From contig OZ038378.1 in NCBI GenBank assembly GCA_964036045.1, positions 7,130,001 to 7,194,000 on the forward strand: a stretch of 64,000 nucleotides of DNA, in the 5' to 3' direction. Source of the DNA: Eutreptiella sp. 'Long Island Sound 2002' (Eukaryota > Protista > Euglenida). Positions within the stretch are counted from its first letter, which is position 1. Every line of letters begins with the position of its first letter. Both the position numbers and the translations under genes were made by a program. Positions 1,571 to 51,444 of this stretch are shown piece after piece. The notes under the pieces were generated by a model. That model was not told where the DNA came from and made no database searches. It worked only from the letters and a program-made list of their open reading frames with translations.

Positions 1571-3730
1571 TATGCTCAAAAATCCAGTACCAAAAGCCAG
1601 GTTGCCAGTAGCCGAAACCTAACTTTTTCTTGGAGCGAAAAATGTTGCCATAGGCACGTTGCATAGATGATAAAGGACCAGCAAATCAGGATGAGATATT
1701 CTAGAAACATGTGCAAAATATCTCTCATATATCTCACTGTGCGAAATACAACGACAAATCTGGTTCGGAAACCATTGACCTTTCCCTCGTTTTTTCTAGA
1801 GTTTTGTAAATTTCTTGAAAATTTTGGCAGATTGAATGGGAATGAAAATCTCGGCAATCGATAGGCCTACACGCGATGTGCGCCTCACGCGCACATTCTG
1901 GGGTTGTCGTGGGATAGCGGGATCTCAAAAAAAATTAGCTTGCCGCGGAGCTGGAAATATTTTATCAAGTGTTGATCAAAATGATGCACCATTTAGATTC
2001 TGGAAGCAGGTGGCCATTTTTTGGTCCAACTTGGGTTGCTTCGAGTCGTGTTTTTGGGGGGTGTGCGTCAGCAAATGAGACGGGGTGTCAAAACCTCATG
2101 TTCAACATCTCCTTCCCACTGTTTTGTTTTTCAATGACGTTTGTTGTTTGAGGCTTATGAACCTGCTTTAGCGATTGGCAAAGCGCCAAGCATTGTCCTT
2201 AGTCTTTGTCGCTTGTTTATTTATTTTTGGGGGGTTACAACATAACTTATCTTTTTCATACAAGTTAGGTGTGTGTGCACTGGCCATTTGGGGCTTGAGG
2301 CCATTTTGGAAGTGAAGTGACAAGGAGCGTAATTGCGTGTTAACATGGTTTTTGGTCTTCATCTTGAGTTTACACGTGTTCAACAGCAGTTTGTTTTCTT
2401 TGGGCTGTCCTTGCATCTTACAGCCACGCCATCTTGATGGGACACGGCGTTCCCGAGTCAAGTTGGGAAATGTTTGCCAAAAGGCATTGCCCAAACCACT
2501 TTACTTGTGCACGGAACCAACTTTTAGGTTCAAGCTGCTTCGAACGTTGCAACGTTGAACTTCGCTTCTTTTTGAGAGGTTTTGGGTTGCCATAGTGAGT
2601 TGATCATGTACCTTCTTCATGACGAACCACGTTGGTATGGGCCTAATATTACTTTTGGCGACATTTTGTAGGCCCTTGACATTTTCCGGAAAAGGATAGA
2701 AATGCCTTGAAGGGTATGCGTTGACACCACACTTTGGTGACACTTTGGCCATTTGGGGCGCACTTTTACACGACTGCACACCACCTCAAAAACAGCCACC
2801 CATACAAACCCCAACCACTAGTAGGTGGTGTCTAGCTACCGTGACACAGCTGTAAGTTGCACACCTTGTTTAGCAAGGAAAGGTATTTTAGTTAGGAACC
2901 AACGTGAAACTCAACCATAGACCCAAGATGAAACACTATTACCAAATATGACTTTTTTCAACCCCCCAACACAAAACGCTTATGTGGCCGTGCCGTGGTC
3001 CATGACGGATATTGGTTCTTGTTGTCGTCATGGAAAGGGATTTCGAACGAAAAAGCCCTATCCAAAAACTCAGTGTCCCACGGGTGTCAGTCACGCGCCA
3101 CTCTCACCGGTGAGGTAGTCTTAGGAGTGAGGTCTTGAACAAGTAGGGGGAAGAGGAGGCGAAGGAAAGGCACAAGATGAGTCTAGAGTGCCCCGAGTGC
3201 GCCTTCTAAATTACCGTGCATTATCGTTTTGTGAGGAGCAACGGCCTTCCCTTTGCCTTCGGCTTCGCCTGCGCAAGGCTTTTCGCTGTGATTCAACGTT
3301 AAGTCATTTCAACCTTCAATGTTCATGAGCGTATGGTTTGCCATCTTGTGTTTTCATGTACGATGAACATGGATCCCAATTGATCCTCCAAACACGCATC
3401 CTTTTAGCCTCTCTCCTTGCAACATCATCCCATTCATCCCATTTAGAATGAACACATTTCCTCTCATTCTTCCCTACCATATCGGATCCCTACCACAGGC
3501 ACACACCTTGTATGGAGAATTTACCGGTGTATAATGTTAAGTTGTGTCCGTATTTGTGCGCTAAGGAGGCACGCAGTGCGTAATGAAAGGCACCGAGACA
3601 CTTAGAACAAACGTTTTCTTGCTCATGTAGCGCTCGCCGTAATGACAAACGCGGGGTTAAAATTAGGTACATGTGGTGGGCACAAGGGTACAAGCGACAC
3701 CCCAATGGCCGAATTGTATTCCTCGCTTAG

Positions 3731-4918
3731 ATGGCGGACCAAATTCCGTTGTTCCGGCCTTTCATGGCGAAAGAGATCGACGGTCCACTACTTCAAGTGT
3801 TGCACTCAGGATACATTGCACAAGGACCGAAAGTCGAAGAATTTGAGCGTGATCTCAAAGCATTTTTGCACTATGAACGGGTGTTGTCATTGAATTCCGG
3901 CACGTCGGGTTTGCATTTGGCGCTTCGATTGATACAGAAGCCCCATGACGGTTGGCCAGGGCTTGGCCCCAATGACGAGGTGTTGACAACTGCGCTCACT
4001 TGCACCGCCACAAACTGGCCCATCCTCGCCAATGGGCTACGGATCAAATGGGTTGATGTGGACCCCAACACCGCCAACATCAACTTGGATGATTTGGAGC
4101 AAAAGTTGTCTCCAACCACCAAGGTGATTATGTTTGTCCATTGGGGCGGTTGCCCAGTGGACCTTGATCAAGTCGAGAGAGTGAAACAAACGTGCAAGAA
4201 CAAGTATGGATTCAAGCCCTATGTTATAGAGGATTGCTGCCACGCTTTTGGCGCGGACTACAAGGGGAAGAAGCTCGGCACCCACGGCAATTTTTGTGTC
4301 TTTAGTTTCCAAGCCATCAAACACTTGACATCCATCGATGGAGGGTTGCTCACCGTTCCGAACCAAGATATGTACTCGCGGGGCAAGCTGCTACGTTGGT
4401 TTGGGATCAATAGAGAGCAGCGCTCTGGAGGAGGTGATTTCCGCATGGAGCCCGACGTCCCTGAGTGGGGCTACAAATTCCATATGAATGATGTTTCCGC
4501 CACGGTAGGGATAGTGAATTTGAAACACGTGCCAGAGATCTTGGCCAAATGCCGAGACAACGCCAAGTTCTATGATGAGGCTCTAGGGGCGTTGCAAGGG
4601 GTGAAGATTTTGGACACCAAGCCGGGTTCAAATCCAAGCTATTGGTTGTATTCCATCAAGATTGAACGCAAGGCCCAATTTTTGCAATTCATGAGCGCCC
4701 ACGGTGTCATGGTTAGCCAAGTGCATGGTCGAAATGACAAGCACTCGACCGTGCGTGCGTTCTCCGCGCCATTGCCCTTGTTGGACAAACTGGAGGAGTC
4801 ATTGGTATGCATTCCCGTCGGGTGGTGGGTAACCGAGTCCGACAGAGAGCATGTGGTGCGTTGTATCAACAATTTCTTAACCCTTGCATCACCACCTACA
4901 CGGCAAGCTAAGTTGTAG
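3731..4918 (+). CDS. DegT/DnrJ/EryC1/StrS-family PLP-dependent nucleotide-sugar aminotransferase, 395 aa, intronless, C-terminal PTS1 (-AKL)
   Basis: Family motifs GPKVEEFE, NSGTSGLHLAL, WVDVDP, VHWGG, IEDCCHA (PLP-binding Asp), SFQAIKHLTSIDGG (Schiff-base Lys), GYKFHM and IPVG are all present. The ORF ends CAA GCT AAG TTG TAG (Q-A-K-L-stop). Confidence 0.95.
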   Translation: MADQIPLFRPFMAKEIDGPLLQVLHSGYIAQGPKVEEFERDLKAFLHYERVLSLNSGTSGLHLALRLIQKPHDGWPGLGPNDEVLTTALTCTATNWPILANGLRIKWVDVDPNTANINLDDLEQKLSPTTKVIMFVHWGGCPVDLDQVERVKQTCKNKYGFKPYVIEDCCHAFGADYKGKKLGTHGNFCVFSFQAIKHLTSIDGGLLTVPNQDMYSRGKLLRWFGINREQRSGGGDFRMEPDVPEWGYKFHMNDVSATVGIVNLKHVPEILAKCRDNAKFYDEALGALQGVKILDTKPGSNPSYWLYSIKIERKAQFLQFMSAHGVMVSQVHGRNDKHSTVRAFSAPLPLLDKLEESLVCIPVGWWVTESDREHVVRCINNFLTLASPPTRQAKL

Positions 4919-5449
4919 GTGCATGAAGACCGCACACGAACTGAAAGGGTGTGCCCAGTCGGCATAGGATCCCATACATTCCCACATCCCAAAACCACAA
5001 AATTCCCCCAAAACCTCTTTCAAAGGATTCCATTGGAACCTTCCATTGGTTCGAAAACAATGACCAAATCAAAGGACACCCCTCTTGGATGGGGCAAGGA
5101 CGGATAATTCGCTGCTCGGAGCATGCAACCATATGACACTTTCGTGAGGACCTTGTAGCTTGGGCCGATTGAGCAATCACTTTATCGATCAAGGGGGTGC
5201 TATGTTTGCATTTAGCATGTTGTCACGTGATTTGGGGAAGTGTTGGTGCTCCATCAAACCTCCCAAGGTGGCTTTACTAACCCTTCAAAAAAGCGTTGTC
5301 AAGTAGCAAGCGTAGCATCCCCCCTTGTATGCTGCGCATGACGCGTGTAGTAATTGTCAATACCATGCGTCGTTGTGGCAATATTGGCTCGGCCTCCCTT
5401 TGTTTCGAAGCGTGTGTGTACGCCTCACCAGCTTCATAGTCATTGCTCA

Positions 5450-7860
5450 AAATCGAAAGAAGATCGTTTAAGAAGGCCGCCTACCATCTCACATCCGCAT
5501 GTGCAATCTGCTGCAGCGTTAACGTGAGATTTCAAATATCAAAGGGTGTTTTTCATCGGTATTACCAAAATGAAATATTTTCCTTGGTTGTATTATGTGT
5601 GCAGTGGGACGAAGGATTCTGTCCCACCTTTGTCTACCAACACTACGTTCCTTTTAGGCACTTGTTGTTTGAGGAGGAAGTTGAGTGGCCTTACAAAGAG
5701 TGTGAGCATTTCCACACCAACGTGTTGGACACCGGGAAGTACTCAGCGATGTGCACGGCTTTGGCTTTGTATGGGTCGCCTTTTTCGACATGGAATGACG
5801 AATCTTCTTGAGATTTGGAAATTCCAGCTCACCTCTAATCTTGTGATTCTTAACCCCATCTTCTGACCTCCTCCCCAAAAGGTTCATCCGTCCATGTACA
5901 AAATGATGCCCCAGGGTGGTACCTTTTGCGTATGTGGTGACAGCTGTTTGTGCATTACAAAGGATGTCCCACACTGTACCCTTCTTTCTGTGCACATTTT
6001 GGGTGCCCACGTCTCCATGTGTACGTCTATATCACATCTCCTATGTGCTATGCCGTGTGGAACATTTTTGATACATGTGTGGCAAGCAAACGGCATCCAC
6101 ACAATTGCTAGGTGCTGGGTGGCTTTCGAGGACACACAGTAGAGTAGAGCTCGCATGTGTGCTATCCATGCTTGACATGAAGCCCAAGGGCACGCCATGC
6201 AAGGGGACAAGAAGTACGATGCCCAATGACAATCCAAACTATATTGGAAAGTGCACCCCGCCTTTGCTCAACCAATTTAGGGCAACTTTGTACACGGAAG
6301 TCCTTGTCCCAAATAGCATATCACGATTTTGTTGTTGATGATGAAAGACAAAGCTTGCTCTAGAGCGTTTGGCACACCATTTTGGACAGGAGAATATGTC
6401 ACTGATCGTTGACAGGCAAGACGGGTAGATCAAGGGCAAGGTGGTGAGAGGCCAATGGGCACCACGACCTATGGAGGGAAAGGGACAAGGGTTTTCAAAC
6501 AAACAACTATGCACCGATGCATCATGCACCCATCATGCCACCCCCCCTCCCCCTAGGTCCAACCATATATCGCACGAAGTCACCCCCCCCTACCTTGGAG
6601 GTAGGGGGGGTGGGGGGGGGTAAGGGGGGGAGGTAGGGGGGGTAGGGGGGGAGGTAGGGGGGGGTCGAGAAGGTAGGGGGGGGGTAGGGGGGGGATGGGG
6701 TGGGTTCGGGGGGAGGGGGGGGGGTAGGATCATACACACAGAAGGCGGTGCACACACAAGGCGGGGCATACACAAGGCGGAACACACAAAAGGCGGCCTG
6801 TGGCCACCGCAGGAGTCATGTTATGTAAGGGGCCACAGGCAAGGCGGTACATACAGAAGGCGGTGCACACACAAGGCGGTACACACAGAAGGCGGCCTGT
6901 GGCCACCGCAGGAGTCTTGTTATATAAGGGGCCACAGGCAAGGCGGTACACACAGAAGGCGGTGCACACACAAGGCGGTGCACACAAAAGGCGGACTGTA
7001 GCCACCGCAGGAGTCTTGTTATTTAAGGGGCCACAGGCAAGGCGGTGCATACAGAAGGCGGTGCACACACAAGGCGGAACACACAAAAGGCGGACTGTAG
7101 CCACTGCAGGAGTCTTGTTATTTAAGGGGCCACAGGCAAGGCGGTGCATACAGAAGGCGGTGCACACACAAGGTGGAACACACAAAAGGCGGCCTGTGGC
7201 CACCGCAGGAGTCATGTTATATAAGGGGCCACAGGCAAGGCGGTACACACAGAAGGCGGTGCACACACAAGGCGGTGCACACAAAAGGCGGTCTATGGCC
7301 ACCGCAGGAGTCATGTTATTTAAGGGGGGTGCGGGGCTGGCCCCCGCGTCGAGCGAAGCGAGCCGAAGGTAGGGGGGGGAGGTAGGGGGGGGAGGTAGGG
7401 GGGGGTAGGGGGGGGGGTAGGGGGGGGGGGTAGGGGGGGGCGACTTCGTGCATACTATCGTCCAACCCCCCATCGTTCCGATTTGTGACAACTTTCTTGG
7501 TGCTTTGTGGCTTCCCAAGGAGGTTGCTGAACTGAGCTTGTAGTAGTGAGGAAATGTGGTCACATGCTGTCACTTGGTCAGGTGAGTACTGGGTGAGGTG
7601 AAGTTTTTGTTTGAGTAGATTGTGTGGGCAGTGTGAAGAAGATTGCCTTGTGGGAAGGCCTTGCAAGCTTCTAGCTCAACTTGTGTGTGGTTTCCCTGGA
7701 ATTGGTCGACGTGTACCCCCTCACAAAATGCCCCCTTAGCAGAGCAAATCCTTGGGTACCAAACGTGTGTAAACATCCCTTCTTCTTGCACTATCCGGCG
7801 CCTCCCAAAGTGAAAATGCATAAGATGGCCCCCTGGGAGCAACCACCGCCCTAACTAGGG
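5450..7860 (-). pseudogene. Degenerate Ty3/gypsy-like pol remnant (linker, RT, RNase H), interrupted by a MITE
   Basis: Minus-strand fragments in pol order: LLQAQFSNLLGKPQST (~7500), NGVPNALEQAL..IVICYLG (RT PFGLxNAP/YLDD-like, ~6300-6390), GVPLGFMSS and QHLAIVW (RNase H-like, ~6090-6200). Multiple stops. Confidence 0.45.
6572..7451. mobile_element. 880-bp MITE-like element with TIRs, G-tract ends and an internal 99-bp minisatellite
   Basis: Termini GCACGAAGTCACCCCCCC ... GGGGGGGCGACTTCGTGC are inverted. (GTAGGGGGGG)n tracts lie inside both ends. About 5.5 copies of a 99-bp unit (TGGCCACCGCAGGAGTC...) span ~6800-7320. No clean TSD seen. Confidence 0.75.
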
Positions 7861-17198: not shown

Positions 17199-17259
17199 CA
17201 GTAGTGACTGCAGGACGGGTTTGCTGTTGAAGCAGATTGTCACCCTGGGTCTTTTTCAG

Positions 17260-18349
17260 GTCCATCCACTACTCGGAACATGTGGCTGCGCAACTGCTAC
17301 GCAACCTACTGTCGGCTGTGGCGTACATGCATGCAAACCGCGTCGTCCACTGCGACATCAAGCCAGAAAATATCCTCCTGGCGCACGCACTGCCTCAGTC
17401 CCGGCCTGACATCAAGAACAACCCGCGCCTGATGACGGCCATCAAGGTGGCCGATTTCGGGTTTGCTAGAGTTGTGGGTGACCGAGACAGCCTGACACGA
17501 TGCTGCGGGACTCCGTATTACGTCGCACCTGAGGTTCTCAGATGCGGGTACTACAGGGACGGCCCTGCCTATGGCAAAGGCTGCGACGTGTGGTCCGTGG
17601 GGGTCCTGGGGTTTGTGATCCTCACCGGAGTACCGCCTTTCCAGGCCCAGAAGCAGAAGGACCTGTTTGCCTCCATTGTAAAGGGCAAGTGGAGTTTCCC
17701 AAAGTCTTGCGCACTGTCCGATCAGGGTCGCGATTTCTTCCGCAGGCTTCTGGTGCCCGATCCCAGGGCACGCGTAACTGCTGCCGAGGCATTGCAGCAC
17801 CCCTGGATCCATGACAAGTGTGCGAGCAACACCACACATTTGCCGGCGGTACAGGCGGCTGTCGCCAGTTTTCGGCAGTCGTTGGAAATCACGTCAAGGC
17901 ATTCGAAGCACAATGCTTCATGGGTGTACAAAGACTGTGCAGCTGCAAACCGTGGCCAGCAACGAGCGCCTGCTGCACCGAAGCCCCCGCTGGCCACTGA
18001 GCTTATGGGGGGCAAAAGGCGTGAAAGGAAGCTGGTGGTGCAGCGCAAGGACCTCCGTGCTGATGTGAGGTCCGTGTTGGGGATCCTGCAGAGCCACCCG
18101 AGTGTGACCCAGTTGGACTTGAGCCAGGACTCTTGGTGCCCTGAGACTGCCAAGAAGATCCTCCAAGTGCTGGACGGAACCCCAAGTATCCGCGCCGTTG
18201 AAGTTGCTCATGGCACGCTCGTACAGCCCTCGCAACTGAAGTCTATCGAATCAATTGTCGCAGTCAATCGTTCTGCCACAGACCCCTCACATGAGGCAGC
18301 ATCCGGCATACTACCTCCCTTGCCTGCGCCCTTGCGGTGTGCTTCATGA
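17260..18349 (+). CDS. CaMK-family Ser/Thr protein kinase, exon 2 (spliced product ~464 aa)
   Basis: VVHCDIKPENILL, KVADFGFA, CGTPYYVAPEVL, CDVWSVGV, GVPPF, ALQHPW. C-terminal extension contains VTQLDLS (LRR-like). Confidence 0.92.
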
Positions 18350-41201: not shown

Positions 41202-44200
41202 TTACATCCGGGGGTATACAACTCCCGGATTGTGGCTGCCGATGACCTTCTTCAATTTGTCGTTCTCCATTTGCAGCAGCAGGAGCTTCTGCTGCATTTC
41301 CGGGAACGCGCTCGGTTTGAGGGCATATTCCTTTGTGAAGGGGTCCTGGCGGAACAGGCTTCGCAACTTCGTGCAAGCCTCTAACAGCGCCACTTCGTGC
41401 GGCTGGAATTGCCAGGTCTCGCCTACCATTTGGGCATCTGTGATCATCTGCAGAGACTCGATGCTGGACATTTCTGGGCGTGAACCCACCTCCATGCTCC
41501 CACCGGGTGGGAGCATCAAGCTCCTTCGACGTTCCGCTGGCTTGTTCATCCGAGCAATCATCTTCTGGACCTTGTCATGCTTTTGCAGGAATCTCTGAGC
41601 TGCCATTTCAGGCGTGAACTTCTGGGAGCTCGAGAGGCCAAGCCGCCTTCTCAGGCTCTTCCCCATCTTGTTCTTGTTTTGGGTGAGGTACGCGATCACC
41701 CGTGCCTTGGCCTCGGCCTTGGCCCTCTCGTTCCCCACACGCCGCCGGTAGCAGAGGACAATGCTCATGATAATCAACAGCACCGCGACTAAAACAGCCC
41801 CCACGCTGAAGTAAACCCACCAGGGGAAGGTGTCACTGACCTTCACGAACAAAGAGAACTGCATTTCGTCCTCAAGCCTGCAGATCGTGGTTTGCAGCAG
41901 TTGGCTGATCATTTTGTCGGCCTCTGGTGTTTTACATGTGTCATGCGCTGGAGTCCAACCGTCGGGGCTTCGCCACAACAGAACCGGAGGGTGAACCGCG
42001 TAATCAATCTTCAGGGCATCCAACCAGGAAGCACCTGCCTTTGCCACACTGACATCGGGGTATGGGACCTTAAGCTGAAGTGTCACGTCAGTGAGAGCCT
42101 GCAGCGCAAACTTGCCATGTTGAGGGGCCGTTTGGTCCGGGGTGAGTGACCGCAAATAGAACGCCGAGGGGCCAACGTATATTTGGGCCATGGGCGCACT
42201 CTTTGAAGGGTGCAACACCTGGTCTAAGGTCACGGGCTGGATCTGGAAGGAAGTTGAAACTGGCCCCAGAGCCCCTGCCTTATAATCCACGTACACAGAT
42301 AGGTTGCCCTCGTCCAGTGCAAACGAGATCGGGGTATCGGGTGTGGGATACGCCTTCGTGGGATCATATGCCACAGAGTAGCAGTTTGCGCCACGACAGA
42401 GACACTTGGTGTTTGGGTCGTGGCCAGTATAACCTGGCAGGCATGCATCACAGTCTGAGCTGAGACCTGTCGTCATGTCGTAGCCACTTCCCGGGATCGA
42501 ACTGTTGTAAAAGAACCGGCCCTTGATCGTGTTGTTGTGACACAGACATCCGTTGTCTTCGCACACCCCAGCATACCCGCCGCATTTTTCGTAGCAATTA
42601 CACTTGGTGCCCGACCATCCGGGGGCACACTGTTCGCAATTCGCCCCGGTCCAATGCCCTCGCGCGAAGTCAGCATAGCATTCGCATCCTGTGTCCTTGC
42701 AGGTGCCATGCCCGCTGCAGAGCCGTGCACCCACAGCAGCATTGGTTTCCCAGTTTTGAGAATCATCCAAGGTCCATGACTGCGGGGTTTGGCAGGCGCA
42801 TCCTGACTGTAGACCATTCTTAACGGGCCCGACCCAGCCGTCTTTACACAAGGTACACGCCTTGTTTGTTCCCACCGCCCCAGAAGGGATTTTCCAGTAT
42901 CCAAGCACCCCATCGGCATGGCACTGGCAGCCATCTACAGTACAGGTCCCATGGCCACACGTGTTTTCTGGCGTCGATTGTTGAGCGTAAATCTTCACTT
43001 TGGGGCAGGTGCAGCCAAGGTTCGGCTGAGCCCACCCGAGGACACACGTGCTACAGTCACTGCCGTCCCAGTATCCCATGGTGTCGTTTTGGAAACAGGT
43101 ACAGCCGGCCCACCCACAGGACCCATGGCCGCTGCAAACGGTGCCCGCGGTTTCGGCACAGAAGCAGCCTAGACCAACAAACCCTGCCTCGCACTCGCAT
43201 GTGCCGTCCGCTTGGCATCCGTAGCGCAGGACCCCGGCCACCATCGTCCTCTTAGGACATTCCTTGTAGCATTTACAGGCAGGGTACGACGCTGCAGAGA
43301 AATCAGCGTGGCACTGGTTGCACTCCACGCCACCGTATCGAGGATCGCAGACACAGTGCTGTCCATTGAATGTACCATGGCCTGAACAGCTCATGTTGTA
43401 CTTGCATTCTGGACCAAACCAGCCGTCAGCACATTGACATTGGCTCCTGTCACCCTTTCGTACCCAGTAACCAGCAGTGGGGCTGGACAAACAGTCGCAC
43501 CCGTCGGCTTCACATATCCCATGGCCATTGCACGCGGTGATATTGCAGTCGCAATTGGATCCTGCCCAGCCATCGGCACACTTGTTACAGCTGGGCCCCG
43601 ACCATTGTCCTGTACCTGCTGCGTGATCGTAGGTGTGGCAGGTGCAAGCGCCATTTGCAAATGCCCCATGTGAAGAGCACGTCACATTCACTGTACATAC
43701 GCCAGGTGGGTAAAAATTGGTCTTGCAAATATCACAGGTCCCTCCACTTGAGCTGCTGAAGTGTCCGTTGATGTCATCATCAAAGCAAGTCGTCCCACAA
43801 CCCCCTGCGATTGTGCATTCATTCGGCTTCGTGGTGACGTAAAAATTTGGGATCACTGGGTCCCCAACAAAAGTTCCACAATCGGCCCCAAAATAGTTGC
43901 TGTTGCAATTACAGCTTCCGCTGTAGCAGACACCGGCCCCAGAGCAGGGGAATCCATTGACAGTTGGACAGGACGGAGGGCAATCGCTTGCGCTGGGTGG
44001 AGAGGCAAAGTGGCCCATAATGGCGACAACAAACGGGAGATTATTGATGGCCCCAGTCGTTCCCTCCAACGTAACGGTGACCTGATACCTGTCCTCTTGC
44101 GCCGCTGCCAGATCGATGACTTCAATATTGTGCATCTTGTCGTACTCAGCCTGCAGATTGCCGTGCCACACAGAAACCCCACTGTGGAGCGTAAGGTCTA

Positions 44201-46211
44201 AATCGTTCATGACGAGCGATGTGACATTGGTGTCGGCCGTGGTAGAGGACTGAGGGTCATGCCAGTACAACACCACCTTCAGCCTGCCAGGTCTTGACAG
44301 ACGAAAACAGTAAGTTGTGCTCATACGGGAGCCAGCCGATGAGAACTGGGACGTGGTGCTACCCTGAGGAACGTACTGCGTGCTGAACCACAGGCTTCCA
44401 TTGGTTGGGAACAGGATGTTGTCTAGGTTGATGCGACCCCAGCCCTGTCTTTGAGATGGTGGATGCCCCCCCTTGTCTTCTGGAGTCTGCATGAAATCAG
44501 CCGACAAGATCATCAGTGCCTTCAGCAACACCCCAGATGGTGCAGCTATGCCATATTGCTGCTGCTGAGTCCCGTCCACATACCGGCCCTCCTGCAAATA
44601 CTGCCGAACCAGGGCAACTGCCCCTGCAGCAGTCGGAGCAGCCATACTCGTACCATATTTCTCCACGGTCTCGGGAGTCGTCACGCCCTGTCGGTTGCCA
44701 TTGCTATTCGCTGCAAAAATCCCGTGTCCTGGGGCCACCAGATCCGGTTTGACCCGACCATCATACGTCGGGCCGTACGAGGAAAAGTAGGCCATCGCAT
44801 CTTTTCCTTTCTCAGAGGCGCCAATGGCGATTACATTTTTGGCATTGGCAGGGGCTGCGATAGTTCCAGCCCCATGCTCACCGTCGTTTCCAGCTGAGAA
44901 GATGATGACGCTCTCCGCGTTGTTGAAAAGGTAATCGTCGGCGAAATTAGACTGCGAATTGTAACTGATGGCACGCACCCCAAATTGACAACTAGGGTCC
45001 GCCAGACAGTTCGTTCCCCATGAATGGGTGTGGATCCTGACTTGAGAGTCCACATTTTCCATCTTCTGCAACATATCCGTCTTGAGGGCGGCGGGGGCCA
45101 GGAATAATCCCGGATTGTTCTGGTCGTTGGGGGAAATGTCCATGAAGACCAACTTTGCCATCGGCGCCGATCCGGCGAGGGGCACAGCTGTGGGCACGGA
45201 GCCCTGCTTGTGCCCTGTCGCACACCCCGCCACATGTGTACCATGTCCAGCAACCTCATCGGTGTCGTCGCCATTGAACGTGCAGGAGTCCACACGGGAT
45301 CCGTCAACCCTACTGAGGTATGCCTGGCCTGTGTTGCACTTGAATTTGAATAACGTCAAGATCTTCCTGTGCGCGGCATTTACAGTGCCGTCGAACGTGA
45401 CGGCCTGTGCCGCATCGTGAAAATACAGACTGTAGTAATCCAATCCGGAATCTGCAACAGCAATGACTTGGTTGTTGCCAAGAATCCCTTGCTGCCAGAC
45501 GGGAAATTGGTCCGCCTTGTTCCCCTGGATCACGTAGTTGGAGGTCGCCATGTGCATGTGGTTCACTACGGGTGGTGCTACAACATAGACCTCAGGCTGA
45601 TTGGCGAGGAATTCGATAACCTCGTCCCACAGCGACTCATCTATCTTCGTCATTATCTGTCCGTCAGGGATAGCATGGAATTCCACAGCGGTGGGCCATG
45701 GGCAATTCTGCCTCCACGCATGTGCCAACTGCTCGGTCTCGTCGATGTTGTTTGTACTTACCCGTGCCACTAAGTGCCCGGTGAGCTGGCCCGTGGATTG
45801 ATACGGTTGCTGCTGTCCCTGAGTCCCAAATTTTGCGTGTCCCCGTTGCTTCAGGGCGTTCAGGTACTTTGCCTGCGTGGGTAAAACGCCGACCCATTTC
45901 AGTTGCTTGCTCGCCGTGCTGAAGCGGTGCACTTCATCGCCACTGGAAAAAACCAAGAAGGTATTCATGGGGATGTATTGGCCAGCGGTTCCAAAGAATT
46001 CCAGGAGTTCCTGCTCCACCTGTTTCGCTCCCGTTGGCTCAAAGTGCAGCAGGTAGTGGTTCTTCATGTCGTTTATGCTCAGCAGCTCGAACTTACTCAA
46101 AGTTGGTTGCGTGCGTGTGTCGAATGTCATGCCTGCCAAGTGGATTGAACGCTTGTCCAACCCGTGCACGACACTTGTCAACAGAAACATCACGATGCTG
46201 GCGAGCCGCAT
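41202..46211 (-). CDS. Type-I membrane subtilisin (S8, Kp43/TagC-like) with EGF/laminin-like repeats, 1669 aa, intronless
   Basis: Signal peptide MRLASIVMFLLTSVVHG. Catalytic VIAVADSG (D), GHGTHVAG (H), SAGNDG (N), GTSMAAP (S), plus QGWGRINL. About 10 or more CSGHGxC..CxC units, TM segment WWVYFSVGAVLVAVLLIIMSIVLCY, then a basic cytosolic tail. Confidence 0.95.
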   Translation of the reverse strand: MRLASIVMFLLTSVVHGLDKRSIHLAGMTFDTRTQPTLSKFELLSINDMKNHYLLHFEPTGAKQVEQELLEFFGTAGQYIPMNTFLVFSSGDEVHRFSTASKQLKWVGVLPTQAKYLNALKQRGHAKFGTQGQQQPYQSTGQLTGHLVARVSTNNIDETEQLAHAWRQNCPWPTAVEFHAIPDGQIMTKIDESLWDEVIEFLANQPEVYVVAPPVVNHMHMATSNYVIQGNKADQFPVWQQGILGNNQVIAVADSGLDYYSLYFHDAAQAVTFDGTVNAAHRKILTLFKFKCNTGQAYLSRVDGSRVDSCTFNGDDTDEVAGHGTHVAGCATGHKQGSVPTAVPLAGSAPMAKLVFMDISPNDQNNPGLFLAPAALKTDMLQKMENVDSQVRIHTHSWGTNCLADPSCQFGVRAISYNSQSNFADDYLFNNAESVIIFSAGNDGEHGAGTIAAPANAKNVIAIGASEKGKDAMAYFSSYGPTYDGRVKPDLVAPGHGIFAANSNGNRQGVTTPETVEKYGTSMAAPTAAGAVALVRQYLQEGRYVDGTQQQQYGIAAPSGVLLKALMILSADFMQTPEDKGGHPPSQRQGWGRINLDNILFPTNGSLWFSTQYVPQGSTTSQFSSAGSRMSTTYCFRLSRPGRLKVVLYWHDPQSSTTADTNVTSLVMNDLDLTLHSGVSVWHGNLQAEYDKMHNIEVIDLAAAQEDRYQVTVTLEGTTGAINNLPFVVAIMGHFASPPSASDCPPSCPTVNGFPCSGAGVCYSGSCNCNSNYFGADCGTFVGDPVIPNFYVTTKPNECTIAGGCGTTCFDDDINGHFSSSSGGTCDICKTNFYPPGVCTVNVTCSSHGAFANGACTCHTYDHAAGTGQWSGPSCNKCADGWAGSNCDCNITACNGHGICEADGCDCLSSPTAGYWVRKGDRSQCQCADGWFGPECKYNMSCSGHGTFNGQHCVCDPRYGGVECNQCHADFSAASYPACKCYKECPKRTMVAGVLRYGCQADGTCECEAGFVGLGCFCAETAGTVCSGHGSCGWAGCTCFQNDTMGYWDGSDCSTCVLGWAQPNLGCTCPKVKIYAQQSTPENTCGHGTCTVDGCQCHADGVLGYWKIPSGAVGTNKACTLCKDGWVGPVKNGLQSGCACQTPQSWTLDDSQNWETNAAVGARLCSGHGTCKDTGCECYADFARGHWTGANCEQCAPGWSGTKCNCYEKCGGYAGVCEDNGCLCHNNTIKGRFFYNSSIPGSGYDMTTGLSSDCDACLPGYTGHDPNTKCLCRGANCYSVAYDPTKAYPTPDTPISFALDEGNLSVYVDYKAGALGPVSTSFQIQPVTLDQVLHPSKSAPMAQIYVGPSAFYLRSLTPDQTAPQHGKFALQALTDVTLQLKVPYPDVSVAKAGASWLDALKIDYAVHPPVLLWRSPDGWTPAHDTCKTPEADKMISQLLQTTICRLEDEMQFSLFVKVSDTFPWWVYFSVGAVLVAVLLIIMSIVLCYRRRVGNERAKAEAKARVIAYLTQNKNKMGKSLRRRLGLSSSQKFTPEMAAQRFLQKHDKVQKMIARMNKPAERRRSLMLPPGGSMEVGSRPEMSSIESLQMITDAQMVGETWQFQPHEVALLEACTKLRSLFRQDPFTKEYALKPSAFPEMQQKLLLLQMENDKLKKVIGSHNPGVVYPRM

Positions 46212-47648: not shown

Positions 47649-48168
47649 GTGGAGGGGACACCTCCAAGTTGATTGGAAGACTTGAATCTATGCATAAGAT
47701 GAATAAGGCACCTATGAAGAGCCCATGTTTTGGAGTTGAGCATGCAACAACACGGAACGCTCCACCAAGCCATTCCAATGTTGCAGCTGCTGCGGAGAAA
47801 GCACGGCAAAGGTTGCATGTTGGGTATATTGTTGAATATCGGCATTCACTTGTTGTAATTCATACCGAAGACGTTGTGCCACCATGTCATTTACATTGAG
47901 CATTGGAGGCACTTGGCCAAAAGAGCTGAACCCAGACAGAGAAGGGGCCACATGTGGGGCCATTGGAGGAGGTCTGGCAGAAGCAGGAGAAGCTGTAAAG
48001 GTGGGTTGAGGACCAGGATTACACTTAAATTTTTGCACATAGCTACAAGCAAAGTCAACAGGTGGTTGACAGTTTTGCTGTAGTTTTGATGGTGGTATTG
48101 AGCCTGGCGTAGGTTCGATTCCTGATTTGAGCATCAGTGCTGGATCGCTCGCCGCCGATCGCAGCGAT

Positions 48169-48398
48169 CGGCGCCGATCGCTGCCATCAGTGGAGCGATC
48201 GCTGCCATCAGCAGAGCGATCTGACAATTGTTCCCAGAGGGATTCGAACCTTAAGTTATAAAATCGCAGCGCCGACTGTGACGCGGCGCCGATCGCTGCC
48301 ATCAGTGGAGCGATCGCTGCCATCAGCAGAGCGATCTGACAATTGTTCCCAGAGGGATTCGAACCTTAAGTTATAAAATCGCAGCGCCGACTGTGACG
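48169..48398. repeat. 115-bp perfect tandem duplication containing GGGATTCGAACC
   Basis: CGGCGCCGATCGCTGCCATCAGTGGAGCG...GCCGACTGTGACG occurs at 48169 and 48284. Confidence 0.88.
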
Positions 48399-48685
48399 CC
48401 CTTCAGCGCCGGCGCCTCATCGACTGTCCAGTCATCCCAAAAATTCCGGTGACGGTATGCAGACTGCGGCCCTAGCAGACTGCGAAAGACTGCGCGCGAA
48501 CATGCGACACGCGCATTTACGACAACCGAAAAAACGACTGCAACTGATCTACTGCAACTGATCTTCTGCTAAAAGGCGACAAGGATGTTTTGAACCGTTC
48601 TGCAGCCCAAATTTATAAAATTATTTTACTCTACTGCAACAGATTATTTTATCGCCAGATAAGGGAACGATACCTTACTGGTAAA

Positions 48686-49605
48686 TCCACTCCCTCCTAC
48701 TCATTTTCAACTCCCTCCTACTCATTTTCAACTCCCTCCAAGTCAAAATCCACTCCCTCCTACTCATTTTCAACTCCCCCCTGCTCATTTTCAACTCCCT
48801 CCAAGTGAAAATCCACTCCCTCCTACTCATTTTCAACTCCCCCCTGCTCATTTTCAACTCCCTCCAAGTGAAAATCCACTCCCTCCTACTCATTTTCAAC
48901 TCCCTCCTACTCAGTTTCAACTCCCTCCAAGTGAAAATCCACTCCCTCCTACTCATTTTCAACTCCCTCCTACTCATTTTCAACTCCCCCCTGCTCATTT
49001 TCAACTCCCTCCAAGTGAAAATCCACTCCCTCCTACTCATTTTCAACTCCCTCCTACTCATTTTCAACTCCCTCCAAGTGAAAATCCACTCCCTCCTACT
49101 CATTTTCAACTCCCTCCTACTCATTTTCAACTCCCCCCTGCTCATTTTCAACTCCCTCCAAGTGAAAATCCACTCCCTCCTACTCATTTTCAACTCCCTC
49201 CTACTCATTTTCAACTCCCCCCTGCTCATTTCCAACCCCCTCCAAGTGAAAATCCACTCCCTCCTACTCATTTTCAACTCCCTCCTACTCATTTTCAACT
49301 CCCCCCTGCTCATTTCCAACCCCCTCCAAGTGAAAATCCACTCCCTCCTACTCATTTTCAACTCCCTCCTACTCATTTTCAACTCCCCCCTGCTCATTTT
49401 CAACCCCCTCCAAGTGAAAATCCACTCCCTCCTACTCATTTTCAACTCCCTCCTACTCATTTTCAACTCCCTCCAAGTGAAAATCCACTCCCTCCTACTC
49501 ATTTTCATCTCCCTGCTGCTCATTTTCAACTCCCCCCTGCTCATTTTCAACTCCCTCCAAGTGAAAATCCACTCCCTCCTACTCATTTTCAACTCCCTCC
49601 TACTC
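48686..49605. repeat. Subterminal array of ~44 21-bp units with an ACTCCC(T)CC core; inverted partial arrays at ~51880-52625
   Basis: Alternating ACTCCCTCCTACTCATTTTCA and ACTCCCTCCAAGTGAAAATCC units; GGAGGGAGT copies near the right TIR. Confidence 0.93.
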
Positions 49606-49908
49606 ACACACAAGTGTCCCCCCACCGATCCAACCATCGACTTGCACACTATTGTTGTCACTGGAAATTCCGTCCCTCACCTGCCCTTGCACACTTGGCA
49701 CGAAGAAAGCATTGTTCCATCTTTTTTTGTGCAATGTGCAAAAGAATGTGTAAAACAATGTGCAAGAGATGTGCTTCCCGATGATGAAAGTAGTATACAT
49801 TGTGGAGCCGTAGCTCAAAACTGGGGGCCATGGAGGCATAACCCAACCTTACACAGGCGAACCGTGAAGGCATGGAACATAAACTCAGACTTGAAATTTG
49901 AAATGTCC

Positions 49909-51444
49909 TTAGTTCTTCGACACTTGAGCCCGCCACTCCCAAAGCTGCTTACACTGATGCAACTCAGCTGGCGAAAGTTGTTCCCCACATGCAGCCCGAG
50001 CATACAACTGAGCCAAGCGAGTATCAACCGAGTCAGCCGAGTCAACCATATTGTGAATGTGTGCATGCAATTGATCATTATACGCGGCCTGCTGCGCACT
50101 CAGGCCCCCAGGAGCCTGATTCACGGTGGTTAGCGCATCTGAAAGCTCAAGGGCAGCATTCAGCTCTTCCTTCAGCGGCGGACCGCTACCCCTACCCTGA
50201 CCCCTACCTCTTCCCTTTGTAGCACCCTTTGGACCATCCCCTCGCTTAGCGGCCTTCCTGACAGTTGGCTGCACGGTTCGCTTGGCGGCCACCGGCGGGG
50301 GAACAGGTCGTGGTGCTTGTGCACCTGCCACATGGACCTGTGTGGAGGAGGCTCGCATGTCCACAAATTGGTTCAGTAGCCTCTCCTCTTCTTCGAGAAA
50401 GGCCCCTGCATCCTGTCCCTGGTCGGAAAGATGAGTTGCCACTCGATCCACATTATTTATATATTGACGCATCCGGGACTGCAGGTTCCCAAGGGAGCGG
50501 ACAATCTGCTCGCGTTTCGTTCTGGCTGGCAAATCAGCCCACGAGGAGATGTCGGTCAATATAATGTCATCGTCTGTAGCATGGATTGCCACGGGTACCT
50601 GCACTGTGGGTAGGGGGAGGCGTTGGCTGCTGCATTTGGCACTGACAAGGACCTGAGTTGCAGTCTGAAATTGTTTTAAAATAAAAATTGGATTGAACAA
50701 CCCAAGATGGAAGCCGACTGAAGATGACCGATGATGCAAAACAGCAAAATAGTGACGACATGGATGCCCGACTCGGACAGCAAGTCCACAACTACACCAA
50801 AACTTCGTATAGGCACCATCCTCAGCCAATGGCTCGAACAGACAAACATAATGTGGACAGTTCATGTAACGCGAAGTGCAGCTGGATTCACTTCGCTTTA
50901 CCTCATAAACTATATTTTTGCCTTGGATTTGGTGCACACGATTGGAGATCGCACAGAATCTAGGTAGGTCTACCAACTCCGTCTCAAGTGAATCGTGACA
51001 CTGTCGATCATAGTTCCATAAGGGTGCCGCCCTGTTAGCAACTATATATTGGGCCTCCCTGGACATGTCATACTCATACACGAGGTACGCAGTTGAAGCA
51101 TTCATCTGCTGGAGCATTCTATCAAACGCCCAGCTTGTCACCTTGCCTGAAACGAACTTGACATAGAATGGGTCAGGCTTCGCGCTTTGGGACTCAGGTT
51201 TGGGTGTGGAGATGGGCGCAGAGGTTAGTACTTGGTGCCCACCCTCGGGCGTGAGTGTTTGTACCTCGGCTTGCGAGGCAAAGGAGACGCGCCGCTTCCT
51301 GTGCTTTTGTGGGCCAGGCACGCTCCCCATTAAATCCATCAGAGATGGCCCTTCCGCTGCCCTGGCTGCAGCAAATGCCGTTGCCTTGGCCTTCTTTTCA
51401 TCGGAGATTGGTGTCTTCGGTGGCATTCTGGAAGTGCACGTCAT
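49909..51444 (-). CDS. SWIM zinc-finger protein resembling the C-terminal half of a MULE/FAR1-type transposase, 511 aa, no DDE domain recognised
   Basis: FWCSCGLAVRVGHPCRHYFAV (SWIM CxC..CxH); KVTSWAFDRMLQQMNAS (FAR1-like helix); NLS-like KHRKRR; GRGRG basic tail. Confidence 0.75.
   Translation of the reverse strand: MTCTSRMPPKTPISDEKKAKATAFAAARAAEGPSLMDLMGSVPGPQKHRKRRVSFASQAEVQTLTPEGGHQVLTSAPISTPKPESQSAKPDPFYVKFVSGKVTSWAFDRMLQQMNASTAYLVYEYDMSREAQYIVANRAAPLWNYDRQCHDSLETELVDLPRFCAISNRVHQIQGKNIVYEVKRSESSCTSRYMNCPHYVCLFEPLAEDGAYTKFWCSCGLAVRVGHPCRHYFAVLHHRSSSVGFHLGLFNPIFILKQFQTATQVLVSAKCSSQRLPLPTVQVPVAIHATDDDIILTDISSWADLPARTKREQIVRSLGNLQSRMRQYINNVDRVATHLSDQGQDAGAFLEEEERLLNQFVDMRASSTQVHVAGAQAPRPVPPPVAAKRTVQPTVRKAAKRGDGPKGATKGRGRGQGRGSGPPLKEELNAALELSDALTTVNQAPGGLSAQQAAYNDQLHAHIHNMVDSADSVDTRLAQLYARAACGEQLSPAELHQCKQLWEWRAQVSKN

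What the first reader, a model, noticed from the sequence alone, without database searches (positions are those of the whole stretch)
3731..4918. Bacterial-type sugar aminotransferase with an appended peroxisomal signal (-AKL)
Seen: an intact, intronless DegT-family ORF whose fold appears to end near VVRCINNF, followed by a short tail LTLASPPTRQAKL-stop. Established: [SAC]-[KRH]-L is the canonical PTS1, DegT enzymes make amino-deoxysugars mainly in bacteria and giant viruses, and kinetoplastids place nucleotide-sugar biosynthesis in glycosomes. Inference: a horizontally acquired gene retargeted to a peroxisome or glycosome for synthesis of an unusual amino sugar in a eukaryote.
Basis: partly seen in the sequence, partly recalled or inferred. 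Interest (0 to 1): 0.72.

Follow-up and report, generated by a model that had tools for sequence, protein, structure and literature searches.

The report
Peroxisome-tagged amino-sugar enzyme in a euglenid
A euglenid alga carries an intact, expressed bacterial/giant-virus-type sugar aminotransferase with a peroxisome-import tag at its end, and relatives in several other algal groups keep such a tag on this enzyme and on the enzyme one step before it, hinting at an undescribed peroxisomal route to a rare amino sugar.

Summary
Window 3731-4918(+) is an intact, intronless 395-aa DegT/DnrJ/EryC1 aminotransferase. The catalytic lysine K197 is present. The closest solved structures are the actinomycete 4-aminotransferases AtmS13 and CalS13 (E about 1e-112). 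The model's last helix ends at residue 386, leaving a flexible tail, SPPTRQAKL. The gene lies in a 911-kb euglenid contig, matches the window's GC and is covered by RNA-library contigs; a 95%-identical copy carries the euglenid spliced leader.

A strict PTS1 tripeptide ends 11 of 18 complete eukaryotic relatives, including 4 of 5 euglenids, and 0 of 333 bacterial, archaeal, viral or metagenomic homologues. Haptophyte-type relatives are fused to an RmlB-type NDP-glucose 4,6-dehydratase, the preceding step, and end in -SKL or -SRL. Standalone eukaryotic dehydratases of that type also end in -SKL.

This is not a recent or euglenid-specific transfer. All eukaryotic sequences form one clade (99/94). 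That clade's closest relatives include giant-virus glycan-cluster genes. Diplonemid orthologues and the E. gracilis model lack the tag. "Glycosome" does not apply to euglenids.

Localisation, activity and the euglenid's own dehydratase partner remain untested.

The parts
3731..4918 (+). Intact, intronless ORF of 395 aa plus stop: a PLP-dependent NDP-sugar aminotransferase (DegT/DnrJ/EryC1 family, CalS13/AtmS13-like)
   Evidence: ORF list; Pfam 1.2e-72; PDB 4xau, 4zwv and 4zas at E about 1e-112; AlphaFold2 mean pLDDT 93.7; no joints in RNA contigs
3729..3730 (+). AG after a pyrimidine-rich stretch, directly before the first ATG: candidate spliced-leader acceptor (inferred, not shown for this copy)
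   Evidence: Sequence ...CCTCGCTTAG|ATG. RNA-type runs give no depth upstream of 3756. One metatranscriptome contig, from a ~95% variant copy, carries the loose 5' end TTTTTTTCGAT at 3756. TTTTTTTTCG is the Euglena leader diagnostic (PMC6630311).
3764..3766 (+). Met12, the alternative start used by the database gene model P0001 (384 aa)
   Evidence: Residues 4-11 (IPLFRPF) align with the conserved N-terminal strand of all homologues, which favours Met1.
4319..4321 (+). Codon of Lys197 in the motif SFQAIKHLT, the predicted PLP Schiff-base lysine
   Evidence: Invariant in alignments A1 and A2 together with D168, S192 and Q194; coordinates verified. Assigning it as the Schiff-base lysine rests on established knowledge of the DegT family.
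4889..4915 (+). C-terminal extension SPPTRQAKL beyond the last helix; flexible in the model and absent from prokaryotic and viral homologues
   Evidence: AlphaFold2 coil with low confidence at the end (mean pLDDT 54 for residues 391-395). Non-eukaryotic homologues stop about 20 residues after the GWW motif, against 22-33 in most eukaryotic ones (63 in one).
4907..4915 (+). A-K-L, a canonical PTS1 tripeptide at the extreme C-terminus, followed by the TAG stop at 4916-4918
   Evidence: Conserved as -AKL or -SKL in 4 of 5 euglenid orthologues and in other eukaryotic branches.
4919..5900 (+). Downstream stretch covered by RNA-library contigs: a long 3' UTR or read-through transcription (not resolved)
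   Evidence: Contigs of runs X5, X6 and X7 lie on 4919-5900. Contigs cannot show RNA ends or strand.

Best explanation
The gene encodes a PLP-dependent nucleotide-sugar 4-aminotransferase. It most likely converts NDP-4-keto-6-deoxy-D-glucose (UDP- or dTDP-linked) into an NDP-4-amino-4,6-dideoxyhexose of the viosamine type. Its flexible C-terminal -AKL would be recognised by the PTS1 receptor PEX5 and carry the folded enzyme into the euglenid's peroxisomes (microbodies), at least in part.

It belongs to an old, patchily distributed eukaryotic clade. That clade's closest relatives are giant-virus glycan-cluster genes, and beyond them lie bacterial, archaeal and phage genes. In this clade both the aminotransferase and the preceding enzyme, an RmlB-type NDP-glucose 4,6-dehydratase, carry PTS1-type ends. 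In haptophyte-type sequences the two are fused into one PTS1-tagged protein.

Shown here: enzyme family, intact active-site residues, a free tail ending in -AKL, genomic integration, coverage by RNA-library contigs, conservation of the tag in eukaryotes, its absence elsewhere, and the fusion with the dehydratase. Inferred: the substrate and product, actual peroxisomal import, and that the euglenid runs the whole pathway there.
For: Family and chemistry:
- Pfam DegT 1.2e-72.
- Best solved relatives are AtmS13 and CalS13, E about 1e-112 over residues 4-380.
- K197, D168, S192 and Q194 are invariant.
- The model is confident.

Substrate:
- Relatives P0132, P0380 and P0376 (760-792 aa) fuse this aminotransferase to a domain that matches dTDP-glucose 4,6-dehydratases at 8e-58.
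- The virus-like contig L025 has an RmlB-type dehydratase, a DegT-GNAT fusion and a GT1. That mirrors the Mimivirus R141/L136/L142 viosamine route (PMC4691112).
- E. gracilis holds UDP-Glc and TDP-Glc and makes UDP-Rha, so the 4-keto-6-deoxy intermediate exists in euglenids (PMC6556577).

Targeting:
- -AKL sits at the extreme end of a coil tail.
- There is no N-terminal extension relative to the bacterial enzymes.
- Euglenid orthologues end -AKL, -AKL and -SKL, with otherwise variable tails.
- Micromonas (-SKL), an unnamed clade (-SKL, -SKL, -ARL) and the fusions (-SKL, -SKL, -SRL) also carry PTS1-type ends.
- Strict PTS1: 11 of 18 eukaryotic against 0 of 333 non-eukaryotic.
- 18 of 120 dehydratase hits end in a PTS1 and are all eukaryote-like. 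The 13 included in a tree group together: 12 at SH-aLRT 97, and the thirteenth, P0376, joins at 83.

Real host gene:
- It lies in a 911-kb contig.
- DNA-like run X1 covers the flanks evenly at 37-40x, and its contigs bridge both ORF borders.
- GC is 50.9% against 50.3% for the window.
- RNA-library contigs cover the ORF.
- A spliced-leader tail is present on a 95% variant contig and on relative L003.

Phylogeny:
- The eukaryotic clade has support 99/94, and its union with the group that includes giant-virus genes has 94/91.
Against: - No localisation or PEX5-binding data exist for any member.
- Having a PTS does not guarantee import: the Paradiplonema proteomics found a PTS1-bearing enzyme in the cytoplasm (PMC12697944).
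- The E. gracilis model P0005 ends ...ANPGP and the diplonemid orthologues (Artemidia, Namystynia) lack a PTS1, so the tag is dispensable in some lineages or those models are incomplete.
- No euglenid dehydratase of the PTS1-tagged RmlB type appeared among the top 120 hits, so pathway-level targeting in euglenids is unproven.
- It is unclear how nucleotide sugars of about 550 Da would enter and leave peroxisomes.
- Euglena microbodies are reported to vary with growth conditions (PMC6630311).
- All NCBIfam equivalog scores (PseC, WecE, ArnB and others) fall far below their cut-offs, so the exact sugar and stereochemistry are open.
- The spliced-leader-tagged contig is a variant copy with indels, not the window's own copy.
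Confidence: 0.6

Rival explanations
1. Same enzyme, but it works in the cytosol. The -AKL end is weak, conditional or vestigial. At most it gives dual localisation, and the amino sugar is made in the cytosol like other nucleotide sugars.
For: The E. gracilis and diplonemid orthologues lack a PTS1. On the tree the tag needs at least 5 gains or losses. PTS1-bearing enzymes can be cytosolic (PMC12697944). Euglena microbodies are not always present (PMC6630311). No transport route for NDP-sugars into peroxisomes is known here.
Against: The tripeptide is kept while the rest of the tail varies, in several eukaryotic branches and on two consecutive enzymes, including fused forms. It never occurs in 333 non-eukaryotic homologues. 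That pattern is hard to explain without selection for the signal.
Confidence: 0.25
2. A recent horizontal transfer from a bacterium (the best structural matches are actinomycete enzymes) into this euglenid, with the tail added afterwards.
For: The best solved structures are actinomycete enzymes. The gene has no introns. DegT genes of bacterial origin are known in other protists (PMC2064935 and PMC7050145).
Against: Actinomycete genes sit in a distant branch of the tree. All eukaryotic sequences form one clade (99/94), with euglenids as a 5-member subclade (100/100). No prokaryotic or viral homologue exceeds 57% identity. GC equals the host's. Orthologues exist in E. gracilis and E. longa.
Confidence: 0.03
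3. The locus is a contaminant, an assembly chimera or a recently integrated giant-virus fragment, not a working host gene.
For: The source looks like a long-read metagenome assembly, judging by the contig name. The sister group includes giant-virus genes. The Atlas's nearest feature cluster is mostly Nucleocytoviricota.
Against: The contig is 911 kb and carries euglenid features according to earlier notes. DNA contigs bridge both ORF borders at the same depth as the flanks. Kinase and subtilase genes, and no viral hallmark genes, were found among the window's long ORFs. RNA-library contigs cover the ORF and a variant copy carries the spliced leader. Orthologues at 70-75% identity occur in other euglenid transcriptomes, one with a spliced leader.
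Confidence: 0.03
4. The enzyme acts on a different keto substrate, such as another position of a nucleotide sugar, a UDP-4-keto-pentose as for ArnB, or an inositol-type ketone. The product would then not be a 4-amino-4,6-dideoxyhexose.
For: All NCBIfam equivalog scores are below cut-off. AtmS13, one of the two best structural matches, serves an aminopentose pathway (from my own knowledge of that system, not tested). The family is chemically diverse.
Against: The enzyme is fused, or sits next, to RmlB-type 4,6-dehydratases in the nearest eukaryotic and virus-like relatives. Such a dehydratase makes the 4-keto-6-deoxyhexose.
Confidence: 0.12

Closest known systems
CalS13 (Micromonospora echinospora, PDB 4zas) and AtmS13 (Actinomadura melliaura, PDB 4xau/4zwv), TDP-sugar 4-aminotransferases of natural-product pathways
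   Same: Full-length homology over residues 4-380 (E about 1e-112), the same SFQA(I/L)KHLT lysine motif, and the same subfamily-specific insert around residues 228-245
   Different: They are bacterial enzymes that end right after the last helix and have no PTS1. They sit in antibiotic gene clusters. In the tree the actinomycete genes are not the nearest relatives.
Giant-virus UDP-viosamine pathway (Mimivirus R141 dehydratase, L136 aminotransferase, L142 N-acetyltransferase)
   Same: The same order of reactions is suggested here by the dehydratase fusions and by the virus-like contig L025 (dehydratase, DegT-GNAT, glycosyltransferase). The eukaryotic clade's sister group includes giant-virus MAG genes (PMC4691112).
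   Different: The viral proteins have no PTS1 (0 of 80). I did not test how close L136 itself is to this protein. [quoted passage not shown]
Glycosomal sugar-nucleotide synthesis in trypanosomatids
   Same: It is a precedent within Euglenozoa for nucleotide-sugar enzymes living in a peroxisome-derived organelle through PTS signals or piggy-backing (PMC8262884)
   Different: It involves different enzymes (such as UDP-glucose pyrophosphorylase). Euglenids are not reported to have glycosomes (PMC9512073). No kinetoplastid homologue appeared among the listed top hits, and the diplonemid homologues lack the tag.
Other DegT-family genes of bacterial origin in protists (Karenia brevis WECE/MVIM-WECE; the Andalucia godoyi 'novel aminotransferase')
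   Same: Patchy eukaryotic distribution explained by old prokaryote-to-eukaryote transfer followed by eukaryote-to-eukaryote transfer (PMC2064935, PMC7050145)
   Different: They belong to different subfamilies (3-aminotransferase type in Karenia) and have different targeting: an N-terminal hydrophobic extension in Karenia and predicted mitochondrial targeting in Andalucia. Neither has a PTS1.
Haptophyte bacteria-like rhamnose pathway (Prymnesium parvum RmlCD fusion)
   Same: It shows that haptophytes use Rml-type enzymes, fused, on the same 4-keto-6-deoxyglucose intermediate. One fusion-clade fragment found here (P0147) is named Prymnesium sp. (PMC6556577).
   Different: That study left RmlB out and does not mention an aminotransferase fusion or peroxisomes.

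Membership tests
DegT/DnrJ/EryC1/StrS sugar aminotransferases (Pfam PF01041) | Full-length match to the family profile above the curated cut-off | tested here: met
   245.6 bits against a cut-off of 19.8; residues 13-379 on profile positions 4-359 of 360
DegT/DnrJ/EryC1/StrS sugar aminotransferases (Pfam PF01041) | PLP Schiff-base lysine present (the dehydrase members of the family have histidine instead), together with the conserved Asp, Ser and Gln around the cofactor | tested here: met
   K197, D168, S192 and Q194 are invariant in alignments of 18 and 50 sequences. The role assignment comes from family knowledge.
DegT/DnrJ/EryC1/StrS sugar aminotransferases (Pfam PF01041) | Transamination of an NDP-keto sugar | not testable with these tools
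   Needs an enzyme assay
NDP-4-keto-6-deoxyhexose 4-aminotransferases (CalS13/viosamine-synthase type) | Closest characterised relatives are 4-aminotransferases | tested here: met
   4zas (CalS13) and 4xau (AtmS13) at E about 1e-105 to 1e-112; the next best structure is at 1e-43
NDP-4-keto-6-deoxyhexose 4-aminotransferases (CalS13/viosamine-synthase type) | Physical coupling to an NDP-hexose 4,6-dehydratase | tested here: met
   In relatives only: the fusions P0132, P0380 and P0376 and the neighbouring gene in L025. No dehydratase was found in the window.
Named NCBIfam equivalogs (PseC, LegC family, ArnB, RfbH, WecE, DesI) | Score above the equivalog's curated cut-off | tested here: not met
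   The best is PseC at 209 bits against a cut-off of 423.5; all others are lower. It is not filed under any of these.
PTS1-bearing peroxisomal matrix proteins | [SAC]-[KRH]-[LM] at the extreme C-terminus | tested here: met
   A-K-L then TAG at 4907-4918
PTS1-bearing peroxisomal matrix proteins | The tripeptide sits on an exposed, flexible tail | tested here: met
   AlphaFold2: the last helix ends at residue 386; residues 387-395 are coil, with mean pLDDT 54 for residues 391-395
PTS1-bearing peroxisomal matrix proteins | The signal is conserved in orthologues and absent from homologues in organisms without peroxisomes | tested here: met
   4 of 5 euglenids and 11 of 18 eukaryotic sequences, against 0 of 333 non-eukaryotic. 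Exceptions: E. gracilis P0005, the diplonemids and P0008.
PTS1-bearing peroxisomal matrix proteins | PEX5 binding and import into peroxisomes | not testable with these tools
   Needs localisation or binding experiments. The literature supports peroxisomes and PTS-bearing proteins in Euglena (PMC9512073, PMC6630311), but not for this organism or this protein.
Glycosomal enzymes (kinetoplastid/diplonemid type) | The host lineage has glycosomes, and orthologues there carry the signal | tested here: not met
   The host is a euglenid, and glycolysis is not sequestered in euglenid peroxisomes (PMC9512073). The diplonemid orthologues P0025 and P0285 lack a PTS1. No kinetoplastid homologue was among the listed top hits.
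Recent, lineage-specific bacterial HGT | Nested among bacterial sequences to the exclusion of other eukaryotes; composition unlike the host's | tested here: not met
   There is a single eukaryotic clade of 22 (99/94), and its sister group includes giant-virus genes. ORF GC is 50.9% against 50.3% for the window.

The most novel reading that the evidence does not exclude
Several unrelated algal and protist lineages (euglenids, a haptophyte-type group, Micromonas and at least one unnamed group) share a two-enzyme, PTS1-tagged module: an RmlB-type 4,6-dehydratase plus a CalS13-like 4-aminotransferase. It would make a viosamine-type NDP-4-amino-4,6-dideoxyhexose inside peroxisomes. The module shares ancestry with giant-virus glycan genes. 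[quoted passage not shown]
Probability: 0.4. Interest if true: 0.75.

Novelty: new variant of a known kind. Interest (0 to 1): 0.62.

Why it matters
Nucleotide-sugar synthesis is generally treated as cytosolic (general knowledge), and the trypanosomatid glycosome is the known peroxisome-derived exception. Here two consecutive enzymes of a bacterial/giant-virus-type amino-deoxysugar pathway carry PTS1-type ends, separately or as one fused protein, in several distant algal groups. None of 333 non-eukaryotic homologues of the aminotransferase has such an end.

If the tags work, three things follow:
- Peroxisomes of ecologically important algae (euglenids, haptophytes such as Prymnesium, picoprasinophytes such as Micromonas) would host deoxy-amino-sugar biosynthesis.
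- Eukaryotic cells would make a sugar class described as bacterial and giant-virus only.
- The close relationship to giant-virus glycan genes would give a concrete case for studying gene flow between these viruses and their algal hosts.

The claim can be tested directly with reporter localisation, sugar-nucleotide profiling and a simple coupled enzyme assay.

Tried and rejected
- **Contamination or chimera: rejected.** DNA-like contigs bridge both ORF borders at flank depth, the contig is 911 kb, and the GC matches the host.
- **Recent actinomycete donor: rejected** by the trees.
- **A closer viral donor: not found.** The 80 best IMG/VR loci are 50-57% identical, no closer than bacteria, and none has a PTS1.
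- **Partner genes in the window: none.** The long ORFs gave only a kinase, a subtilase and ORFs with no Pfam match. The window has no second copy of the aminotransferase.
- **Euglenid dehydratase partner: not found.** The dehydratase-domain search returned no Euglena entry among its top 120 hits. The standalone PTS1-bearing dehydratase contigs I fetched (L087-L091) have no euglenid spliced leader.
- **Naming the second PTS1-bearing aminotransferase clade (P0007, P0011, P0016, P0034, P0054): failed.** Their sources carry no organism names and the contigs have no euglenid leader.
- **Earlier notes of this scan:** nothing on peroxisomes, PTS1 or dehydratases in this genome.
- **Literature:** no paper in the searchable library links DegT or sugar aminotransferases, or dTDP-glucose dehydratase, to peroxisomal targeting.
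- **The spliced-leader junction at 3756:** I could not reconstruct it for the window's own copy, because the tagged contig is a variant with indels.
- **Not run:** the large representative-protein search.
Full report
**1. Observation**

The window has a single uninterrupted ORF at 3731-4918 on the + strand. It encodes 395 aa and ends ...FLTLASPPTRQAKL-stop. It matches Pfam DegT_DnrJ_EryC1 end to end (245.6 bits). The closest solved structures are the actinomycete TDP-sugar aminotransferases AtmS13 (4xau/4zwv) and CalS13 (4zas), at E about 1e-105 to 1e-112 over residues 4-380. The next best structure scores only 1e-43.

All NCBIfam equivalog models (PseC, LegC family, ArnB, RfbH, WecE, DesI) score far below their cut-offs. 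The subfamily is therefore clear, but the exact sugar is not.

K197 in the motif SFQAIKHLT, together with D168, S192 and Q194, is invariant in alignments of 18 and 50 relatives. From family knowledge, a lysine at this position marks an aminotransferase rather than one of the family's dehydrases.

An AlphaFold2 model built on the 50-sequence alignment is confident (mean pLDDT 93.7). Its last helix spans 369-386, and residues 387-395 are coil with lower confidence (mean pLDDT 54 for residues 391-395). The N-terminus aligns residue for residue with the bacterial enzymes, so there is no N-terminal presequence.

**2. It is a real, expressed host gene**

Earlier notes of this scan call the genome a euglenid. 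My data agree:
- The closest named proteins are from Euglena longa (71%) and E. gracilis (70%).
- The gene lies in a 911-kb contig.
- Its GC (50.9%) equals the window's (50.3%).
- Other long ORFs in the window include a protein kinase and a subtilase.

Seventeen public runs hold the stretch, or part of it. I laid four of them on 2900-5900:
- X1 is a DNA-like run whose contigs cover the flanks evenly at 37-40x and bridge both ORF borders.
- The three RNA-type runs (two estuary metatranscriptomes and one probable RNA run) cover the ORF and at least 980 bases downstream, but nothing upstream of 3756.
- No joints were found, so the ORF has no introns.
- One metatranscriptome contig carries a loose 5' end, TTTTTTTCGAT, at 3756.

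TTTTTTTTCG is the standard diagnostic for the Euglena spliced leader (PMC6630311). However, that contig is a ~95% variant copy with small indels. The variant also appears in the DNA-like run at comparable depth. It therefore shows trans-splicing of this gene family in this organism or a close relative, not the exact junction of the window's copy.

The window has an AG at 3729-3730, after a pyrimidine-rich stretch and directly before the first ATG. The database gene model (P0001, 384 aa) starts at Met12. The conserved IPLF(K/R) strand argues for Met1. The C-terminus is the same either way.

**3. The tail across homologues**

Among the five members of the euglenid subclade the ends are as follows:

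| Sequence | C-terminal end |
|---|---|
| Window | ...TRQAKL |
| P0002 | ...QLHAKL |
| P0003 | ...LRKAKL |
| E. longa P0004 | ...GRGSKL |
| E. gracilis P0005 | ...AANPGP |

P0003's contig begins with the spliced-leader tail. The tails differ in sequence and length, but the last three residues are kept in four of the five.

The other homologues divide cleanly:
- The 80 best loci from named bacterial and archaeal genomes (45-54% identity) have no strict PTS1. Almost all stop at ...GW right after the last helix.
- The 80 best viral loci (50-57%) also have none, and 78 end in GW.
- Counting metagenomic hits as well, a strict [SAC][KRH][LM] end occurs in 11 of 18 complete eukaryotic sequences and 0 of 333 others.
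- With the relaxed pattern used in the Paradiplonema study, the figures are 14 of 18 against 3 of 333.

These counts are not phylogenetically independent. On the tree the strict tag needs at least five gains or losses.

**4. Phylogeny**

A careful maximum-likelihood tree of 82 sequences (tails excluded by column filtering) places all eukaryote-like sequences in one clade of 22, with ultrafast bootstrap/SH-aLRT support of 99/94. The clade contains:
- Micromonas pusilla XP_003057743 (-SKL) together with a 760-aa fusion (-SRL);
- an unnamed group ending -SKL, -SKL, -ARL, -GKL and -SKI;
- two single sequences (P0012, P0022);
- the diplonemids Artemidia and Namystynia plus P0008 (no PTS1);
- the euglenids (100/100);
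- a dehydratase-fusion group (100/100). One fragment from this group in the dehydratase search (P0147) is named Prymnesium sp..

Euglenids group with the fusion group (97/88), and then with the diplonemids (96/91).

The sister of the eukaryotic clade is a 17-sequence group, and the union of the two has support 94/91. This group includes a giant-virus MAG gene (L145). L145 is identical in the aligned columns, and has the same C-terminal end, as L008, a contig labelled as a Pacebacteria MAG. L145 lies among a TFIIB-like gene, GT7 and GT2 glycosyltransferases, a methyltransferase, an SDR dehydratase and a second DegT gene. The group also includes L025, labelled an Oscillochloris MAG. L025 carries a TFIIB-like gene, an RmlB-type dehydratase, a DegT-GNAT fusion and a GT1.

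I read both contigs as giant-virus DNA. That rests on TFIIB being a eukaryotic and giant-virus gene rather than a bacterial one (my own knowledge). The Atlas's nearest feature cluster is mostly Nucleocytoviricota, which I treat only as a lead.

Actinomycete genes, including the relatives of the solved structures, sit further away. The gene is therefore of non-eukaryotic type. The transfer is old, it is shared with or passed among several eukaryotic groups, and its direction relative to giant viruses is unknown.

**5. Function**

The fusion proteins P0132 (780 aa), P0380 (792 aa) and P0376 (760 aa) join this aminotransferase to a complete SDR domain. The P0132 domain matches dTDP-glucose 4,6-dehydratases at 8e-58. 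That enzyme makes NDP-4-keto-6-deoxyglucose, the substrate of a 4-aminotransferase.

The gene order in L025 (dehydratase, then aminotransferase fused to an N-acetyltransferase) mirrors the Mimivirus UDP-viosamine route of R141, L136 and L142 (PMC4691112).

E. gracilis contains UDP-Glc and TDP-Glc and makes mostly UDP-L-rhamnose with a plant-like NRS/ER enzyme, so the 4-keto-6-deoxy intermediate is available in euglenids (PMC6556577).

I infer an NDP-4-amino-4,6-dideoxyhexose product. The nucleotide and the C4 stereochemistry remain open.

**6. The partner enzyme also carries the tag**

In a search with the dehydratase domain, 18 of the 120 best hits end in a strict PTS1, and all 18 are eukaryote-like. 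They comprise fusion fragments ending -SKL or -AKL and the standalone proteins P0149, P0153, P0154, P0221 and P0230, which end -SKL. P0149 lies on a contig from an NCBI genome assembly, next to a mitochondrial-carrier gene.

The bacterial type stops at ...KWLE. In a tree of 46 sequences, 12 of the 13 PTS1-bearing ones form a clade (SH-aLRT 97) apart from the bacterial type, and the thirteenth (P0376) joins it at 83.

In the fusions the tag sits at the end of the dehydratase domain. The two enzymes thus carry the signal independently when separate and share one when fused. This is the strongest argument that the tag is functional.

I could not find the euglenid's own dehydratase. No Euglena entry appeared among the top hits, and the standalone contigs have no euglenid leader.

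**7. What is known**

- The surveys of euglenozoan peroxisomal and glycosomal proteins that I read do not mention this enzyme (PMC9512073, PMC12697944).
- They state that euglenid peroxisomes do not sequester glycolysis.
- They also show that a PTS does not guarantee import.
- DegT-family genes of bacterial origin in Karenia and Andalucia belong to other subfamilies and have other targeting.
- The rhamnose study in Prymnesium left RmlB out of its survey.
- No paper in the searchable library links sugar aminotransferases or dTDP-glucose dehydratase to peroxisomal targeting.

**8. Verdict**

The enzyme family, the genuine PTS1-type end and its conservation across eukaryotes are shown here.

Three points remain inferences:
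- peroxisomal import;
- the amino-sugar product;
- a complete pathway in the euglenid.

The case is worth following at the level of the two-enzyme PTS1-tagged module across algae, not of this single gene.

Noticed in passing
window 3756-4534 (reads laid): A second copy of the gene, about 95-97% identical, is present in the DNA-like run at depth similar to the window's copy and in the metatranscriptomes. It differs by small indels (+2 after 3862 in one RNA contig, -1 at 3941, -2 at 4131) that would shift the frame locally. It could be a paralogue, a pseudogene or another haplotype or strain.
   Followed up: partly
window 4919-5900: RNA-library contigs continue at least 980 bases past the stop codon, while nothing is seen upstream of 3756. 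This is a long 3' UTR or read-through or polycistronic transcription. Contigs cannot tell which.
   Followed up: no
L008 (CAJQIN010000007.1, 'Candidatus Pacebacteria' MAG) and L025 (CAZKTU010000017.1, 'uncultured Oscillochloris' MAG): Both contigs look like giant-virus DNA binned into bacterial MAGs. The L008 gene matches a GVMAG gene (L145) over all aligned columns and at its C-terminal end. L025 carries a TFIIB-like gene beside a dehydratase, DegT-GNAT and GT1 glycan cluster.
   Followed up: partly
P0132, P0380, P0376 (760-792 aa); fragments P0006, P0009, P0018, P0107, P0140, P0143, P0147: These are bifunctional aminotransferase plus RmlB-type 4,6-dehydratase proteins ending in -SKL or -SRL. 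One fragment is named Prymnesium sp. and one is an MMETSP transcript. This may be the RmlB step that the Prymnesium rhamnose study left out of its survey.
   Followed up: partly
P0362 (Micromonas pusilla CCMP1545 XP_003057743.1, 435 aa): This annotated 'aminotransferase' belongs to the same eukaryotic clade and ends in -RSKL. I found no literature on it.
   Followed up: partly
window 41202-46211 (-): An uninterrupted 1669-aa ORF with a subtilase (Peptidase_S8) domain and EGF-like repeats, unusually long for an intron-free gene in this window.
   Followed up: no
window 48001-50000: Strongly negative GC skew (-0.40), with overlapping long ORFs on both strands (48675-49661 -, 48805-50133 +) that have no Pfam match. 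This is probably strand-biased repeat sequence.
   Followed up: no
window 17237-18349 (+): The ORF holds the C-terminal two thirds of a protein-kinase domain (profile positions 92-263). It is probably one exon of a larger, intron-containing gene.
   Followed up: no
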